From: Auanema rhodensis
Lineage: Eukaryota; Animalia; Nematoda
Direction of reading: 5' to 3'
NCBI GenBank assembly: GCA_964057225.1
Contig: OZ059899.1
Span: forward strand, 8,804,001 to 8,868,000
DNA: 64,000 nucleotides
Part shown: one piece after another, positions 19,845-27,131 of the stretch
Layout: each line of letters begins with the position of its first letter
Numbering within the stretch: position 1 is the first letter of the stretch
Program-made: the position numbers and the translations under genes
Notes under the pieces: model-generated
Databases searched by the model: none
What the model was told of the DNA's origin: nothing
Seen by the model: the letters and a program-made list of their open reading frames with translations, nothing else

Positions 19845-21610
19845 TCAATCTTCAATTGTATCGGCGTTAACATCTGGATAATCGCCATCATTTGCGTTTT
19901 CCACCTCATTATTTTCGTCACCGTCACCGTCACAATCATCAGCATCACCATCACCATCACCATCACCATCACCATCAGCATCTTCGCGGTCTTCAACCTG
20001 ATCTACAGGCTTCTCTTCTTCTGCTTCCTTGTCTTCATTCGCATCAGCATGTGTTCCGCGCATTGGCTTAACTATAGTATCTCCTCCACCCAGCTCTTCT
20101 CGCTTTGTATGCAATTGATCGAGGGTCATTAACTTGTTCTTTAAAATAAATTAAATAAACTACACAAGATAAATATTGTACCTGCTCCCGACGCCAGTGA
20201 GGTGGAGTTGCACTTCGATCCATTCGGGTGAAGCGGAGCTGCCCTCGTCCTTTTACCTTTACGTCGGCTCTTCGAACATCTCGATCATTATTTCTATCTC
20301 TTCCAGAGCTTCTATCATAATCTCTTCTACCATCACGATCACGATAATTACTTTTTCGTGGACTGCGTGAACGTACTCGACGATTACGATCCCGGTCCCT
20401 ACTACGATCGCGATCACGATCTCTACTACGATCACGGTCCCTACTACGATCATGGTCTCTACTCCTATCACGACTTCTGTCTCGGCTTCTTCTTCTTCTA
20501 TCCCGATCCCGGTCTCTGTCCCGTTCCCGATCGCGATCGCGATCACGATCACGATCCCTGTTACGATTTTTATCATTATCACGTTGTCTTCGTCTATCTT
20601 CAGGCGTTTTCGATCTTCTCATTAAAAATGAATGCTGATTAGTAGGCTCAGGCGGAAGATCAGCAGCTGATATTGAAGAGACCTATTTGTTACATTCATA
20701 AATTGGAAAACAGTGAGAAATGCTCACCTGGACCTCTGGAACAGAGTTATTTTCTTTTTCATCGTCGTTACTACGTTTTCCTTTACGTTTTCTGGATTTT
20801 TCTTCATCATCAGAAGAAGAGCTACTGAAAAAATTATAAAATATAAATATTGATATATTGATAACTTGCCTATCACTTTCACTGGAGGACTTAGCTCTCT
20901 TTTTACGAGCTAATTCACCACTATTTATAATAATTACATCAGCAAACGGACGACACTTCGGATCAACTTTGAGAAGTTCGATTTCTGTGACTACTTCAGC
21001 TCCAGAAACCACCTTAATTTCTTATATAAGCTTAAAGATGATAAATAAAACTCGTACTCGTCCAAAAACAACATGCTTGTTATTTAAATGGGGAGCTGGT
21101 TTAGTTGTGATGAAAAACTGGGATCCATTTGTATTCGCACCCTAATAGCATCAATTATAATGTACTTTATATGCAACTTATACCTTATTGGCCATAGATA
21201 AAAGGAAAGGTTGATCGTGCTTCATGGAAAATTCTTCATCATCAAAAATTTCTCCATAAATAGATTCTCCACCTGTACCGTTCCCCATTGTAAAATCACC
21301 ACCCTCAAAAAAAGATTTTGAAATATTGATATGATATTGTATATCCAACCTGAATCATAAAATCCTTGATAACACGGTGAAACGTGGAACCTTTATAATG
21401 AAGAGCTTTCCCACTTCTTTTACTATTTCCAGCTTGGCCAGTACATAGTTGAATGAAGTTTTCACACGTTTTTGGAGCTGAAATAATAATTTTCGCTTCC
21501 GCTAGAAATATTAACCAACCTAATTCATCGAATAACTCGAACACAATACGACCCGCATCACGCCCATCAATAGCAACATCAAAGAAGCTACGACGACGAT
21601 TTTTCGCCAT
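19845..21610 (-). CDS. Cyclophilin-type PPIase with RS/RD domain (PPIG/NKTR class; resembles Brugia CYP-1)
   Basis: [68 protein letters not shown]; RD/RS repeats; KVKGRG and [11 protein letters not shown] motifs typical of PPIG. Confidence 0.93.
20375..20560 (-). repeat. Coding Arg-Asp/Arg-Ser dipeptide repeat (GATCGT/GATCGC-type hexamers) of the cyclophilin
   Basis: [10 protein letters not shown]...RSRDRSRD seen directly in translation. Confidence 0.85.
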
Positions 21611-21851
21611 CCGAAAAGATGACCTATTAGACTAACAACAATATTCATAATACATATGTAAGCTTTGGTTTCAACCAATTTTTAAAAATTCAAAATTTAT
21701 GAATAAATTTATTAATTATTGCCGGATAGCATTTGCTTTACTGAGTGAAAAAACAACCGTTGACAACAAACGGAAAATCGATAAACAAAAAACTCCGATA
21801 TTTCCCAACTAGAATTTTAATAAAAATATAAAATGAAGTTCGTTCAGAAAT

Positions 21852-24760
21852 TTAAGCTTCAAACTCTTCGGCTCCTTCAGCCTCCTTGGTGTATTCATCA
21901 CAGAATCGACGGAATTTAGTAATCAAATCGCCAACCTTGATCTCGCCACGTACCTTTATATATAAAAAAATTCAAATGTTAAATAAGAGCACTTACGGCA
22001 TTATCTCTGGTGCGAACATTTACAGTTCCATTTTCTTTCTCTTTAGGTCCTAAAACGAGGATAAAGTTGAATTGGGCAAGTTGAGCGTTTCTGATTTGCT
22101 TATTCATAGTATCAGAGCAACCCTCATCAAATTCAACCTTCAAAGATAGATAAAACAACGAAACGAAAAAAAATCATACCTCAAATCCAGCATCAAACAG
22201 CTTATCACGGACTTCACGAGCATAATCAGCAATGCTCTCATGGACGGTAATAATTTTTACCTGATGCGTACGAATATACATTACAATAACAAAAAAAATT
22301 ACCTGACGAGGAGAAAGCCAGAATGGCCATTTTCCTCCGAATGATTCCGTAAGAATAGCAGTCATTCTTTCTACAGATCCCAAAACAGCACGATGGATCA
22401 TGACAGGACGATGTTTCTCACCCTTCTCACTTTAGAAAAGCATTAATATATATATATTATAATATCGAACTAACTCGAAATAGGAGAGATCAAAACGTTC
22501 TGGAAGTTGAAAATCTAATTGAATGGTGGCACATTGGTGATTTCTCTTAAGAGCATCTTGGATTGTTATATCAATCTGAAATAAAAAATATTGAACATCG
22601 AACAAAAAATAATACCAACCTTCGGTCCATAAAAAGCTCCATCTCCAGGATTAAGCTTCCATGGTCTACCAGAAGCATCTAAAACTTCCTTTAGTCCTTC
22701 TTCAGCATTATTCCATGTCTTTAATAAAAACACTTATATAGCGAAGCATGAATAGAAGCCTACCTCAACATCTCCTAAAAACTTCTCTGGTCTAGTGGAA
22801 AGGTTCAGTTTGAAAGTAAAACCGAATACTGTTTCATAAGCGTAACTAAGGAAATCTAAGCAAGCTTTGATTTCATCTTTAATTTGATCTTTGCGACAGA
22901 AAATATGGGCATCATCTTGTTGGAATCGTCTGACACGTGTCAATCCAGTAAGAGCACCAGACATTTCATTCCTAATTCAAAATACAAACATGAAAAAAGC
23001 ATGCTTGGTTACCTGTGTAAGACTCCGAAATCGGCAAAACGGAATGGCAAGTCGTTGTGAGTACGAGGCTGGTGAGCGAACATAAGACAATGTCCGGGAC
23101 AATTCATTGGTTTAAGACCAAACGTTTCTTTTTCAATATCAAACCTGGAAATATGATGAGGTTTTAGTTCAATTTCTCAAAATTAATGTTTTACTTGAAC
23201 ATATCATCAGAATAATGTTGCCAATGCCCAGAAGTTTCCCAAAGCTTACTGTTGTACATATTTGGTGTTATTACCTAAAGATGTAGTGTTAGAGTTAAAA
23301 TACAACTGGCTATACCTCAGTAAATCCTCTTTTTCTATATTGCTTCTTAATGAAGTTAACTAGCTGATTATAGATGTGAGCACCTTTAGGATACCAAAAG
23401 GCCGATCCAGGAGAAAGTGGATTGAAGAAGAAAAGTTCTTGTTCACGTCCGATTTTTCTATGATCACGTTTGGCTGCTTCTTCCTAAATCATACAATTTT
23501 TAATTATTTCCATTTGACTTGACCTGCCTGGATTTTTTGCCATTCTTTTAATTGCTTGGAATCGGGGAATGAAATTCCATAAACACGTTGAAGAGTTTCG
23601 GCTTCACAGTTACCCTCCCAATAAGAAGAAGAAGCTTTAGTGATTTGCATAGCTTTAACTTTTCCGGTATGACGAACATGAGGCCCTCTACATAAATCGA
23701 TCAAGGGTCCACAACGATAAACGGTCGTAGTCGGGGTTTTGACTTTTTCATTAAGGATTCGAACCTGAACGAAGCAAATTTATTATAAATTCAATGTAAA
23801 TGTTGCCTTAAACTGATTATATTTGAACATCTCCAGAAGATCTTCTTTGGATACTTCTAAACGTTCGAACTTTTGTTTGTCCTAAATCTATAAGTTTGAA
23901 AAGAGAAAAAATAAAAAAACAAACCTTCACAGCACATTTAACGATTTCTTCAATCTTAGGGAAATCTTCTTGCGAAACTGTACGATCCTTAATAGCATGA
24001 TATATATCAAGAAGGATAGATAGAACATCAAAACTTTTCAATGAGTATAAGTAGTATTAAACAAGACAGGTGTTCAAACACAAACACTAATAAAGCAGAG
24101 AAGCTGACAAACCTCATGCCACATATCGTAATAAAATCCTTCTTGGATCGGAGGACCATAGCATAAATGACCACCGCAGTATCTTTCTACAGCTTCTCCA
24201 AGAATATGAGCAGAACTATGCCAGAAAACCTTAAAATTAATTCTTGAAATTTTATTAAAATTTCATTTTACCTGTTTTGCTTCATCATCATCAAACTTAA
24301 GAAGATGAAGAGTGGCATCACCTTCGAAGGGGCGATCCAAATCCCAAACCTAAAAACAATAATAGTAAATTAATTAAATGTCCCTTAAACTTACTTCTCC
24401 GTTTACTTTTGATATAATCGAATTTTCAGCCAACCCCTTGGAAATTTTTTCCGCTATTTCAATAGGGGTAGTTCTCCACGATTCACCATCGAATTGTTTC
24501 CCATCAGGAAGGGTAATTTTGATAGGTTTTGTCTCCTTCATTACTGTAGATTAAAAAAGATTTTTCTATATCACTTACTTTTGCAGCTAGTTCTTCCTTA
24601 TATTTCACCATTAATTTATCGAAAAGATCAATACGTTCTTGAATATAAGCAGGCCAAGGCTTCATCTCGGTCTTAGCCAGAGTCATCTATTAAACACATT
24701 AAGCATTTGTATAAATAAGCAACAAACCTTTTCCGGAATATTTTCTTTGGCTTCAACCAT
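21852..24760 (-). CDS. tars-1: Threonyl-tRNA synthetase (cytosolic start MVEAK; upstream in-frame extension listed separately)
   Basis: [13 protein letters not shown] domain, [58 protein letters not shown] anticodon-binding domain. Confidence 0.97.
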
Positions 24761-25374
24761 TTTTGAACAATAATATCTACCAGATGGGCCAAATGGGTAG
24801 AATACTCGACAGTTCAGAAGGCTACGTACGAGACGCGTCGTGACCTTTTCTAGAGGTATACCTAAATTAAGGCAACCATATAAAAGATAAATGAATAGCT
24901 TGAAGTATTAAAACAACATCAGATAATATAAATGACTTTGTTCGTTTGAAATTCCAGCCTATAGAAAGCCATCACCATTTGCCGTTTAAATAAAAATTGC
25001 TACGTATAACGGCTTTCGTTGCAGGATAATTATCAATTGAGAATAGGCAAAAAGTTGAATTTAATTCTGTTATAACTTCTATAGCAAAACCAGTAACGCT
25101 GATGAAGTATATTGAAGGTTACATAGAAAAAAAATCATAATAAGACAAATTATAACATAGAATATTAGTTGTTTTACAGCAAGCATATTCAGTATATACG
25201 AAAAAAATTCAGGTATATAAATGTGAGCTATAATGAATATTTTAAATGTAATACAAATATTTTATCAAGCATGCGATTTAGTTTTATATTCAAAGAGGAG
25301 CATTCCCATCACGTTGTGTAACATTATGAAAACTACGTACCCGTTTTTGAAAAAACGTTCTCAGGGGAAAACAT
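24761..25374 (-). CDS. Putative 5' extension of tars-1 encoding a mitochondrial presequence: exon part 24861-24761 plus candidate AUG micro-exon 25374-25341
   Basis: In-frame TTRLVRSLLNCRVFYPFGPSGRYYCSK before MVEAK; phase-1 acceptor before 24861 matches the phase-1 donor of micro-exon MFSPENVFSKTG. Confidence 0.55.
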
Positions 25375-25572
25375 CTAGGAAAAACTCTTATGTCTAATGT
25401 AATTGTTCATAATATAATTCAAATATTTTATCAAGCATGCGATTTAATTTTATATTCAAAGAGGAGCATTCCCATCACGTTGTGTAACATTATGAAAACT
25501 ACGTACCCTTTCTTGAAAAAAATGTTCTCAGAGGAAAACACCTAGGAAAAACTTATGTCTAACATAATTGTT
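25254..25572. repeat. Tandem duplication, 2 x ~166 bp
   Basis: caaatattttatcaagcatgcgattt... starts at 25254 and again at 25420, highly similar throughout. Confidence 0.95.
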
Positions 25573-25850
25573 TGATAGGGATAGAAATGGTGACAACTAT
25601 TTATAATCGTTTGTAATAAGTGTAAAGGCTTTATTTAAGTGTACTATTTTATCCTCATACATTTAAAATGGAATAAATTTATTAAAAAATTTAAGAACAC
25701 TCAGTAGAAAGTTCATTTTTTTGTTTTCTATTGTTCGTGTATAACATAACACAGTTGTATTTCACTTTCGTACATCAGAGCGGAACACTTCTGTAACTTC
25801 CTTTCTAATAAATCTTGTTTTTTTTTACTTTGTATTCATTCTAGATCTTC

Positions 25851-27131
25851 ATGGCATCTTACGTTGGGTCCGCTCTATCGACATTACGATTTTTCAAAGA
25901 CTACGCATTCAATCTCGGTGCATATCTTCTTGCGAGTAAAGGTCATAAGTATGTTATCGTTATTATTGATTGAAAACAGTTTTTATTATTTTCACTTTAG
26001 TTTTTTCTGTAATACAATTTTTGATTTAAGATCAATGCCGACTTTAACTCAGCTTGAATCTATTTCTCAGCTTAGCCCTCTTGTTATCAGAGTTTTAGGA
26101 CAAAATCCTGGACCATTTACTTTACAGGGCACTAATACATACATAATTGGAAATGGGAAAAGGTTGGCAAGAAATAGTTAATTGATTATTTTAATTTTCA
26201 TTGCAGAAGAATTTTGATTGATACTGGAGAGCCAAATGTACCGAACTACATTACAGAATTGAAAAAAGCGCTGGGGGTAAATTTTTGTTTTAAATTTTTT
26301 TCATATTGGTTTTTAGGATACTGAGATTGATTCTATCATTGTGACTCATTGGCATCATGATCACGTGGGAGGATTGCCTAATGTGTTGGAAAAGATAGTT
26401 GGACATAAGGTTTGTTTTCATCGTGAAATCTTTTTGATTTCTCAGTCACTTGTTAGATTCCTGTTTATAAGTTCCAAAAGCAAAATGGTGAAGAAAATCC
26501 TGAGCATTTTAATTATGTCACTGATGGTCATGAATTGAAAGTAGATGGAGCAACAATTCGTTTCATCCACACTCCTGGACATACTGTAGATCATGCTGCA
26601 TTGTACTTATTAGAAGAAAATGCTGTCTTTAGGTATCAGTAAAGTAAAAAAAAAAGTATTCTCCCTATTTAGTGCTGATTGCATTCTGGGAGAAGGTACA
26701 ACAATATTTGAAGATTTACACGATTACATGAATAGTCTACAAAAGATCAAAAGTTTTAATGCTGCAAAAATTTATCCTGGTTTGCTGAGTTCTCTGCTTC
26801 ATATTTTATTAGGTTCTTTTCAGGTCACGGTCCTGTGGTTGAAAAGACTGAGGATAAAGTCAATGAATATATTGAACACAGAATGAAGAGGGAACGAGAA
26901 ATTGTTAATATATTAACTGAGAAGAAAGAAATGACTAGTATGGATATAACTAATGTAGTTTATACGGTATCATTGTTTTCTATTGTTTTTCAAAATCGTA
27001 TTTATTATTAGTCTTCTCCATGGTCAGTTCGTTTGGCTGCACTTAACAATGTGAAACTGGTATTAAACAAGTTGATAAAGGATGGTACTGTTCAAAAGGT
27101 TGGATTTGAGATGTATCGAATTGTAGAATAG
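25851..27131 (+). CDS. LACTB2: LACTB2-type metallo-beta-lactamase endoribonuclease
   Basis: [69 protein letters not shown]. Confidence 0.93.

What the first reader, a model, noticed from the sequence alone, without database searches (positions are those of the whole stretch)
24758..24866. Cryptic mitochondrial presequence on ThrRS with tandem ACG-ACG codons (possible non-AUG start)
Seen: 27 in-frame codons upstream of the cytosolic ATG (24760) read ACG ACG CGT CTC GTA CGT..., giving TTRLVRSLLNCRVFYPFGPSGRYYCSK. This is Arg-rich, has no acidic residue and ends in a cleavage-like RYYCS. The exon contains no AUG, and the nearest acidic residue (LEK) lies just upstream of the ACG pair. Established: yeast ALA1 initiates its mitochondrial isoform at redundant upstream ACG codons. 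Inference: dual targeting by near-cognate initiation after trans-splicing at 24862. The AUG micro-exon (next finding) is a competing explanation.
Basis: partly seen in the sequence, partly recalled or inferred. Interest (0 to 1): 0.72.

Follow-up and report, generated by a model that had tools for sequence, protein, structure and literature searches.

The report
ACG-started mitochondrial ThrRS presequence
This nematode's only visible threonyl-tRNA synthetase gene seems to make its mitochondrial form by starting translation at a conserved ACG codon upstream of the normal AUG, a trick known from yeast but, as far as I could find, not reported in worms.

Summary
The minus-strand gene is the nematode ThrRS (tars-1 orthologue). 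Its cytosolic part is 90% identical to the Auanema sp. JU1783 protein.

Spliced RNA assemblies put the SL1 leader on the acceptor AG 24863-24862. The mature mRNA therefore carries a 101-nt leader with no AUG in any frame, open only in the ThrRS frame.

From the ACG at 24838-24836 the leader encodes 26 Arg-rich, acid-free codons. These align with the experimentally validated C. elegans TARS-1 presequence, and the C. elegans ATG1 falls in the same alignment column as this ACG.

The same in-frame ACG, always with A at -3, heads an AUG-less presequence-like leader in nine other species of clades V and IV. In the four pairs scored, changes downstream of it are codon-patterned: synonymous changes, Ser TCN/AGY switches and 3-nt indels. 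Changes upstream of it are not.

Exceptions without the ACG are Diploscapter and Enterobius.

Best explanation: weak ACG initiation, with leaky scanning to the AUG at 24760, gives mitochondrial and cytosolic ThrRS from one mRNA. Translation itself is not shown.

This is a new member of a known kind (yeast ALA1-like). The C. elegans two-AUG arrangement looks derived. The scan had not noted this elsewhere.

The parts
24862..24863 (-). AG of the 3' splice acceptor (ttaatttAG|G) used for SL1 trans-splicing; exon 1 starts at 24861
   Evidence: loose ends in runs X1 and X4 at 24863, reverse complement CAAGTTTG, plus genomic AG, equal the 3' end of SL1. No contig depth at 24951-25772.
24839..24861 (-). 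23-nt untranslated leader between SL1 and the conserved ACG; it contains the species-variable first ACG (24841-24839)
   Evidence: 16 of 23 nt identical to Auanema JU1783. 5 of the 8 in-frame codons spanning the junction (24862-24839) differ, none synonymously, so there is no coding signature.
24836..24838 (-). Conserved in-frame ACG with A at -3: proposed weak start codon of the mitochondrial isoform
   Evidence: the same ACG with A at -3 occurs in 10 species; it aligns with ATG1 of Caenorhabditis. ACG is 8-12% of Thr codons in this gene, in JU1783, in L001 and in H. placei.
24761..24835 (-). 25 codons of the presequence (RLVRSLLNCRVFYPFGPSGRYYCSK): Arg-rich, acid-free, ending in an R-x-[YFL]-C-S motif
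   Evidence: Against JU1783: 6 identical codons, 7 synonymous-only, 12 replacements, one 3-nt indel and a Ser TCA/AGC switch.
24758..24760 (-). AUG of the cytosolic ThrRS in strong context (tcaaaaATGg); 696-aa product
   Evidence: The MVEAKEN-type start is conserved in clade V orthologues.
24728..24861 (-). Exon 1 (134 nt): leader, presequence and the first 11 cytosolic codons
21852..24861 (-). ThrRS gene: 18 exons, stop TAA at 21854-21852. Two introns are GC-AG (23765-23806 and 23484-23527).
   Evidence: joints. The cytosolic part is 90.4% identical to Auanema sp. JU1783 P0277.
24973..24975 (-). ATG of the candidate micro-exon (aaATG|gtgatg): rejected
   Evidence: joined to 24861 it gives ATG GTA TAC CTC TAG. 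No RNA depth there and no conservation with JU1783.

Best explanation
One SL1 trans-spliced tars-1 mRNA makes two ThrRS proteins by leaky scanning.

A minority of scanning ribosomes start at the near-cognate ACG at 24838-24836 (A at -3), and possibly also at the adjacent ACG 24841-24839. They translate a 26-codon, Arg-rich, acid-free presequence fused to ThrRS, and this form is imported into mitochondria. It is probably cleaved near the conserved R-x-[YFL]-C-S motif.

Most ribosomes pass the ACG. They meet no other AUG in any frame and start at the strong-context AUG 24760, making the 696-aa cytosolic enzyme.

Shown: the mRNA structure, the absence of any AUG, the homology of the extension to a validated presequence, its coding-type evolution, and the conservation of the ACG and its -3 A.

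Inferred: initiation at ACG, Met as the first residue, import, the cleavage site, and that this genome has no second ThrRS gene.
For: 1. RNA structure. Four spliced assemblies show 17 intron joints. Two carry the SL1 tail at the 24863/24862 acceptor, and nothing lies upstream.

2. Leader content. The SL1-plus-exon-1 sequence has one ATG only (24760). The ThrRS frame is open from SL1's own TGA, and the other frames are closed.

3. Precedent in C. elegans (PMC10196762). C. elegans has a single tars-1 gene and one mRNA. ATG1 plus residues 1-41 is a proven mitochondrial targeting sequence, and ATG2 gives the cytosolic form.

4. Alignment (A4). The ACG-encoded Thr of eight AUG-less species and the Met1 of five Caenorhabditis species share one column. 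MRL in C. elegans matches (ACG)RL here.

5. Species breadth. In-frame ACG with A at -3, 1-25 nt after a splice acceptor, with no ATG anywhere before the cytosolic ATG, is found in:
- the window
- Auanema JU1783
- A. ceylanicum
- H. placei
- a strongylid contig (L001)
- Mesorhabditis
- P. pacificus
- P. fissidentatus
- S. carpocapsae
- B. xylophilus

6. Coding signature after the ACG. Counts are identical / synonymous-only / replaced codons:
- window vs JU1783: 6 / 7 / 12
- L001 vs H. placei: 14 / 11 / 10
- L001 vs A. ceylanicum: 10 / 7 / 16
- the two Pristionchus species: 17 / 8 / 9
All indels are multiples of 3, and there are Ser TCN/AGY and Arg CGA/AGA switches. Before the ACG there are no synonymous-only changes.

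7. Codon rarity. ACG is 8% of Thr codons in this gene and 12% in JU1783, L001 and H. placei. Multiplying per-lineage ACG fractions over about 7 independent lineages gives roughly 2e-4 (my estimate).

8. Composition. All extensions have 5-8 Arg+Lys and 0-1 acidic residues. The cytosolic N-terminus has 7 acidic residues in 36.

9. Public gene models. Those for H. contortus, Cooperia, P. pacificus and P. fissidentatus are Met-less or flagged partial at exactly this extension.
Against: - There is no ribosome profiling, N-terminal proteomics or localisation data for any ACG species.
- In HEK293T cells an ATG1-to-ACG mutant of the C. elegans gene lost the mitochondrial signal, so ACG is not automatically used in every context.
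- Two species do not fit. Diploscapter pachys has an open 47-codon leader but ACT or CAG at the homologous place. Enterobius has an AUG-less open leader with an in-frame CTG as its first complete codon and no in-frame ACG.
- In Pristionchus and Mesorhabditis ACG is the commonest Thr codon (55-77%), so those lineages add little to the codon argument.
- Contig assemblies cannot exclude a rare upstream-AUG transcript.
- Acceptors in species other than the window are inferred from sequence only.
- I could not check this genome for a separate mitochondrial ThrRS gene.
Confidence: 0.72

Rival explanations
1. The extension is translated and is a presequence, but it starts at another codon. Candidates are the first ACG (24841), ATA (24859) or CTG (24817), or several of them redundantly.
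For: One search lists in-frame near-cognates ATA, AAG, ACG, ACG and CTG. The tandem ACG ACG recurs in A. ceylanicum. Yeast ALA1 uses ACG as its alternative initiator (PMC2909995, abstract).
Against: Only the second ACG is conserved. In JU1783 the first ACG is AAA, ATA is TTA and CTG is CTC. The coding signature starts at the second ACG. The first ACG has G rather than A at -3.
Confidence: 0.1
2. The mitochondrial form comes from a rare transcript with an upstream in-frame AUG exon. The SL1 mRNA would then make only the cytosolic enzyme.
For: Contigs drop rare variants (caveat). Ten phase-compatible ATG...N|GT candidates exist upstream by chance. Public models for H. contortus (817 aa) and A. 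ceylanicum (762 aa) add upstream AUG exons.
Against: The named micro-exon is out of frame and stopped. There is zero RNA depth at 24951-25772 in four runs. The upstream intergenic DNA shows no similarity to JU1783 (best E 0.099). The added exons of H. contortus and A. ceylanicum are unrelated to each other and are acidic, which is not presequence-like at the N-terminus. This idea also does not explain the conserved ACG and the -3 A.
Confidence: 0.07
3. The leader is an ordinary untranslated 5' UTR, conserved for RNA-level reasons. Mitochondrial ThrRS would come from another gene.
For: 101 nt is long for an SL1 mRNA but not impossible (my knowledge of typical leader lengths, not checked here). 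The pre-ACG part is conserved at nucleotide level (L001 vs H. placei 24 of 25). I could not search the genome for a second ThrRS.
Against: Substitutions follow a codon-wise pattern, indels are in frame, and there are no stops in 12 species. The extension is homologous to a validated targeting sequence. C. elegans has a single ThrRS gene. Folding of the leader is no better than shuffles in the window (z -0.4 to -0.8).
Confidence: 0.05
4. C-to-U RNA editing turns the ACG into AUG in a fraction of transcripts, creating a canonical start.
For: It would explain strict conservation of ACG rather than any near-cognate codon. ACG-to-AUG start creation by editing is well known in plant organelles (my knowledge, not tested here).
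Against: The RNA contigs show no differing letters anywhere on the stretch (table 3), although minor variants would be lost. I know of no such nuclear mRNA editing at start codons in nematodes.
Confidence: 0.03

Closest known systems
C. elegans tars-1: one mRNA, two AUGs (Guo et al. 2023, PMC10196762)
   Same: It is the orthologous gene (80% identity over the enzyme). A single mRNA carries an N-terminal extension that is the mitochondrial targeting sequence, with weak upstream and strong downstream initiation. The extension is homologous: MRL... against (ACG)RL..., and both end in an R-x-[FYL]-[CS]-S motif.
   Different: The upstream start here is ACG, not ATG. The presequence and the cytosolic AUG share one exon here, whereas C. 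auriculariae has an intron between them. The mRNA here is SL1 trans-spliced 23 nt before the ACG. In C. elegans the authors' ATG1-to-ACG mutant lost mitochondrial signal in human cells.
S. cerevisiae ALA1 (ACG) and GRS1 (TTG): mitochondrial aaRS isoforms from upstream non-AUG codons (PMC2909995 abstract)
   Same: One gene serves both compartments. The mitochondrial form is an N-terminally extended product of a near-cognate codon upstream of the cytosolic AUG.
   Different: The enzyme (ThrRS) and the phylum differ. The leader follows a trans-spliced SL1, in some species only 1-7 nt before the ACG. Use of the codon is inferred here from conservation and was not tested by mutagenesis.
Cryptic mitochondrial isoforms from near-cognate N-terminal extensions in yeast (PMC6582344 abstract)
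   Same: The general principle is shared: an upstream in-frame near-cognate start adds a targeting peptide.
   Different: Those are mostly minor extra pools of proteins. Here the extended form would be the only source of an essential mitochondrial enzyme, if the genome has one ThrRS gene as C. elegans does.

Membership tests
Dual-localised aaRS made by upstream non-AUG initiation (ALA1/GRS1 type) | In-frame extension upstream of the cytosolic AUG on a mature mRNA that has no upstream AUG | tested here: met
   SL1 at 24861, one ATG only, frame open for 34 codons.
Dual-localised aaRS made by upstream non-AUG initiation (ALA1/GRS1 type) | The extension has the properties of a mitochondrial targeting sequence | tested here: met
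   5 Arg+Lys and 0 acidic residues in 26; it aligns with the C. elegans Met1-Lys41 segment, which imports GFP and yeast mt-ThrRS. No dedicated predictor (MitoFates, TargetP) was available.
Dual-localised aaRS made by upstream non-AUG initiation (ALA1/GRS1 type) | A near-cognate codon in a favourable context, conserved among relatives | tested here: met
   ACG with A at -3 in 10 of 12 AUG-less species. The exceptions are Diploscapter and Enterobius.
Dual-localised aaRS made by upstream non-AUG initiation (ALA1/GRS1 type) | Initiation at that codon demonstrated by mutagenesis, start-site profiling or an N-terminal peptide | not testable with these tools
   Only assembled RNA contigs were available.
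Dual-localised aaRS made by upstream non-AUG initiation (ALA1/GRS1 type) | A single gene supplies both compartments | not tested
   Stated for C. elegans in PMC10196762. This genome could not be searched as a whole, and the scan's notes hold no other ThrRS.
C. elegans-type tars-1 with two in-frame AUGs | Orthology of the enzyme and of the presequence | tested here: met
   80% identity to P0444; alignment A4.
C. elegans-type tars-1 with two in-frame AUGs | An upstream AUG (ATG1) heads the presequence | tested here: not met
   there is no ATG in the leader; the homologous codon is ACG.
Eukaryotic class II threonyl-tRNA synthetase | TGS, SAD (second additional domain), class II core and anticodon-binding domains in order | tested here: met
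   The 18-exon model translates to a 696-aa protein. It is 90% identical over its full length to P0277, which carries PF02824, PF07973, PF00587 and PF03129. Pfam was not run on the window exons themselves.

The most novel reading that the evidence does not exclude
ACG initiation of mitochondrial ThrRS is the ancestral and usual state across rhabditid nematodes (clades IV and V), often only 1-25 nt behind the trans-spliced SL1. An essential mitochondrial enzyme in many free-living and parasitic worms would then depend wholly on a non-AUG start. On this reading the textbook species C. elegans, with its ATG1, is a derived exception produced by a single C-to-T change.
Probability: 0.55. Interest if true: 0.75.

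Novelty: new member of a known kind. Interest (0 to 1): 0.63.

Why it matters
If true, three things follow.

1. It would give a deeply conserved, essential non-AUG start codon in animals. It sits in a system where CRISPR tests are easy (P. pacificus), and C. elegans serves as a natural ATG control.
2. It explains why public gene models for this gene are inconsistent. They are flagged partial, start at the cytosolic Met, or are padded with unrelated upstream AUG exons (H. contortus, A. ceylanicum, Cooperia, Pristionchus). It also shows how to correct them.
3. It reframes the published C. elegans two-AUG mechanism as a derived state. This raises a testable question: how is the ratio of mitochondrial to cytosolic enzyme set by start-codon strength directly behind SL1?

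Tried and rejected
- **Representative search with one exon.** It gave mostly fragments and non-nematode representatives. A follow-up word search with P0003 turned out to be a copepod lineage and was wasted.
- **Scaffold alignment of all 18 exons (A1).** MAFFT misplaced the short exons, so I dropped it. A trimmed version (A3) worked and found the nematode proteins.
- **The joined spliced protein was never sent to a database tool.** Searches used single exons by reference, stored protein ids, or alignments of such references. The joined CDS existed only in scratch, for translation and for local blast against loci already fetched.
- **RNA structure around the ACG.** The window leader folds no better than shuffles. 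JU1783 has a long-range helix (z -4.6) that is not shared. The small stem pairing ACG with CGU Arg codons is probably a by-product of the two triplets being complementary.
- **Upstream AUG exon.** The ten chance candidates have no RNA or conservation support.
- **The scan's own notes.** They held nothing on ThrRS or non-AUG starts.
- **Literature.** No report of an ACG start for nematode ThrRS was found in the held library. This is not proof that none exists.
Full report
**What is there**

The finding lies at the 5' end of a minus-strand gene. Laying the contigs of four public runs on 21800-25900 gave 17 intron joints, so these runs are spliced RNA. From the joints I built an 18-exon model. 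It translates without a stop into a 696-aa threonyl-tRNA synthetase starting at the ATG at 24760. This protein is 90.4% identical to the Auanema sp. JU1783 protein P0277 and 80% identical to C. elegans TARS-1. P0277 carries the TGS, SAD, class II core and anticodon-binding Pfam domains. The window therefore comes from a rhabditid close to Auanema (inference from identity and from synteny).

**The observation**

Contigs of runs X1 and X4 end at 24863 with eight loose letters. Their reverse complement, CAAGTTTG, together with the genomic AG, makes the last ten bases of SL1. No contig covers 24951-25772. The mature mRNA is therefore SL1 followed by exon 1 from 24861.

In this RNA the only ATG in any frame is 24760. 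The ThrRS frame is open for 34 codons back to a TGA supplied by SL1, and the other two frames are closed by stops.

**Link to a proven presequence**

Guo et al. (PMC10196762) showed the following for C. elegans:
- It has one ThrRS gene and one mRNA.
- ATG1 plus residues 1-41 sends GFP and yeast mt-ThrRS into mitochondria.
- The stronger ATG2 gives the cytosolic enzyme.

I obtained nematode ThrRS proteins with a profile of stored references and fetched the DNA of twelve orthologous loci. In alignment A4, Met1 of five Caenorhabditis species falls in the same column as a Thr in eight AUG-less species. C. elegans MRL... matches (ACG)RL... here. An R-x-[FYL]-[CS]-S motif recurs near the end of several of the extensions.

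**The ACG**

In ten species the Thr codon at the head of the extension is ACG with A at -3. It lies 1 to 25 nt after a 3' splice acceptor, and no ATG occurs in any frame before the cytosolic ATG. The species are:
- the window
- Auanema JU1783
- Ancylostoma ceylanicum
- Haemonchus placei
- a strongylid contig (L001)
- Mesorhabditis spiculigera
- Pristionchus pacificus
- Pristionchus fissidentatus
- the clade IV species Steinernema carpocapsae
- the clade IV species Bursaphelenchus xylophilus

The first ACG of the window's pair is AAA in JU1783 and ACA in two strongylids. It is ACG again only in A. ceylanicum. The conserved codon is therefore 24838-24836.

ACG is the rarest Thr codon in this gene (3 of 36). 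It makes up 12% of Thr codons in JU1783, L001 and H. placei. It is the commonest Thr codon in Pristionchus and Mesorhabditis, which therefore add little to this argument. Multiplying the per-lineage fractions over about seven independent lineages gives roughly 2e-4. This is my own rough estimate, and it takes the Thr itself as given.

**Coding signature**

Downstream of the ACG, pairs of species differ in the way coding sequence does.

| Pair | Identical codons | Synonymous-only | Replacements |
|---|---|---|---|
| Window vs JU1783 | 6 | 7 | 12 |
| L001 vs H. placei | 14 | 11 | 10 |
| L001 vs A. ceylanicum | 10 | 7 | 16 |
| P. fissidentatus vs P. pacificus | 17 | 8 | 9 |

- Window vs JU1783 also shows one 3-nt indel and a Ser TCA/AGC switch.
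- The Pristionchus pair has in-frame indels and two Ser switches.
- Upstream of the ACG, five of the eight in-frame codons differ between the window and JU1783, none synonymously.
- In strongylids this upstream stretch is almost invariant at nucleotide level (24 of 25). That looks like an RNA-level constraint, perhaps start-codon context.
- All extensions have 5-8 basic and 0-1 acidic residues, against 7 acidic residues in the first 36 of the cytosolic protein.

**Mechanism proposed**

The mechanism is leaky scanning on one SL1 mRNA. A weak start at ACG gives presequence-ThrRS for mitochondria. The ribosomes that pass it meet no AUG until the strong-context 24760 (tcaaaaATGg) and make the cytosolic enzyme.

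This is the yeast ALA1/GRS1 principle (PMC2909995) applied to the gene that C. elegans runs with two AUGs. Because clade IV and most clade V species share the ACG, the Caenorhabditis ATG1 is most simply a derived C-to-T change (inference).

**Against, and limits**

- Nothing here shows translation or import.
- The C. elegans ATG1-to-ACG mutant lost mitochondrial signal in human cells.
- Diploscapter pachys keeps an open 47-codon leader but has no ACG at the homologous place.
- Enterobius has an AUG-less, acid-free open leader with an in-frame CTG as its first complete codon and no in-frame ACG.
- Acceptors outside the window are read from sequence only.
- Contigs cannot exclude rare isoforms or a low level of C-to-U editing.
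- I could not search this genome for a second ThrRS gene.

**The rival micro-exon**

The ATG at 24975-24973, followed by GT, would join to 24861 as ATG GTA TAC CTC TAG. That is out of frame and stopped. The upstream intergenic DNA shows no similarity to JU1783 (best E 0.099). Ten chance ATG...N|GT candidates lie in DNA without RNA depth. Public models that add upstream AUG exons in H. contortus and A. ceylanicum add unrelated, acidic peptides. Other models for H. contortus, Cooperia and both Pristionchus species are simply Met-less or flagged partial at this extension.

**Novelty**

Five full-text searches found the C. elegans two-AUG paper and the fungal non-AUG cases, but no report of an ACG start for nematode ThrRS. 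I file this as a new member of a known kind. It is well supported by comparative sequence and awaits a translation experiment.

The joined spliced protein was not sent to any database tool. It was used only inside scripts.

Noticed in passing
window 23765-23806 and 23484-23527 (minus strand): The two introns flanking the 237-nt exon are GC-AG rather than GT-AG. Both are confirmed by RNA joints in all four runs. Two adjacent GC-AG introns in one gene is unusual.
   Followed up: partly
window 25245-25572: A tandem duplication of about 166 bp (two copies, 92-95% identical) lies in the intergenic region between tars-1 and the divergent upstream gene.
   Followed up: no
window 24839-24861; L001, L003, L009 leaders: The untranslated stretch between the acceptor and the ACG is more conserved than the coding part after it. 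L001 vs H. placei is 24 of 25 identical, and a CCTCT-like pyrimidine motif is shared with the window and JU1783. It may be a context element for non-AUG initiation.
   Followed up: partly
window about 25851 onward (+ strand); L002 850-2090; L003 321-2837: A metallo-beta-lactamase-fold gene lies head-to-head with tars-1. This divergent arrangement is conserved in Auanema JU1783 and A. ceylanicum. A cyclophilin-type gene follows tars-1 here (21178-21610, minus strand) and in P. fissidentatus.
   Followed up: no
L007 1860-2000 (Diploscapter pachys): The leader is open in frame for 47 codons and is basic, but it lacks both ATG and the conserved ACG (ACT or CAG at the homologous place). In-frame TTG and CTG are present, so the start codon there is unclear.
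   Followed up: partly
L012 about 1880-2000 (Enterobius vermicularis): This clade III orthologue also has an AUG-less, acid-free open leader of about 40 codons. An in-frame CTG is its first complete codon after a putative acceptor, so a non-AUG start may extend beyond clades IV and V with a different codon.
   Followed up: partly
P0272, P0275, P0280, P0286, P0388, P0421 (public protein models): Public ThrRS models in several parasitic and free-living nematodes are Met-less or flagged partial at the presequence, or carry unrelated upstream AUG exons. These are probably artefacts of forcing an AUG start.
   Followed up: partly
L008 1985-2003 (C. auriculariae): A short out-of-frame uORF (ATGATG...) overlaps ATG1. 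It resembles the uORF across ATG1 that Guo et al. describe in C. elegans.
   Followed up: no
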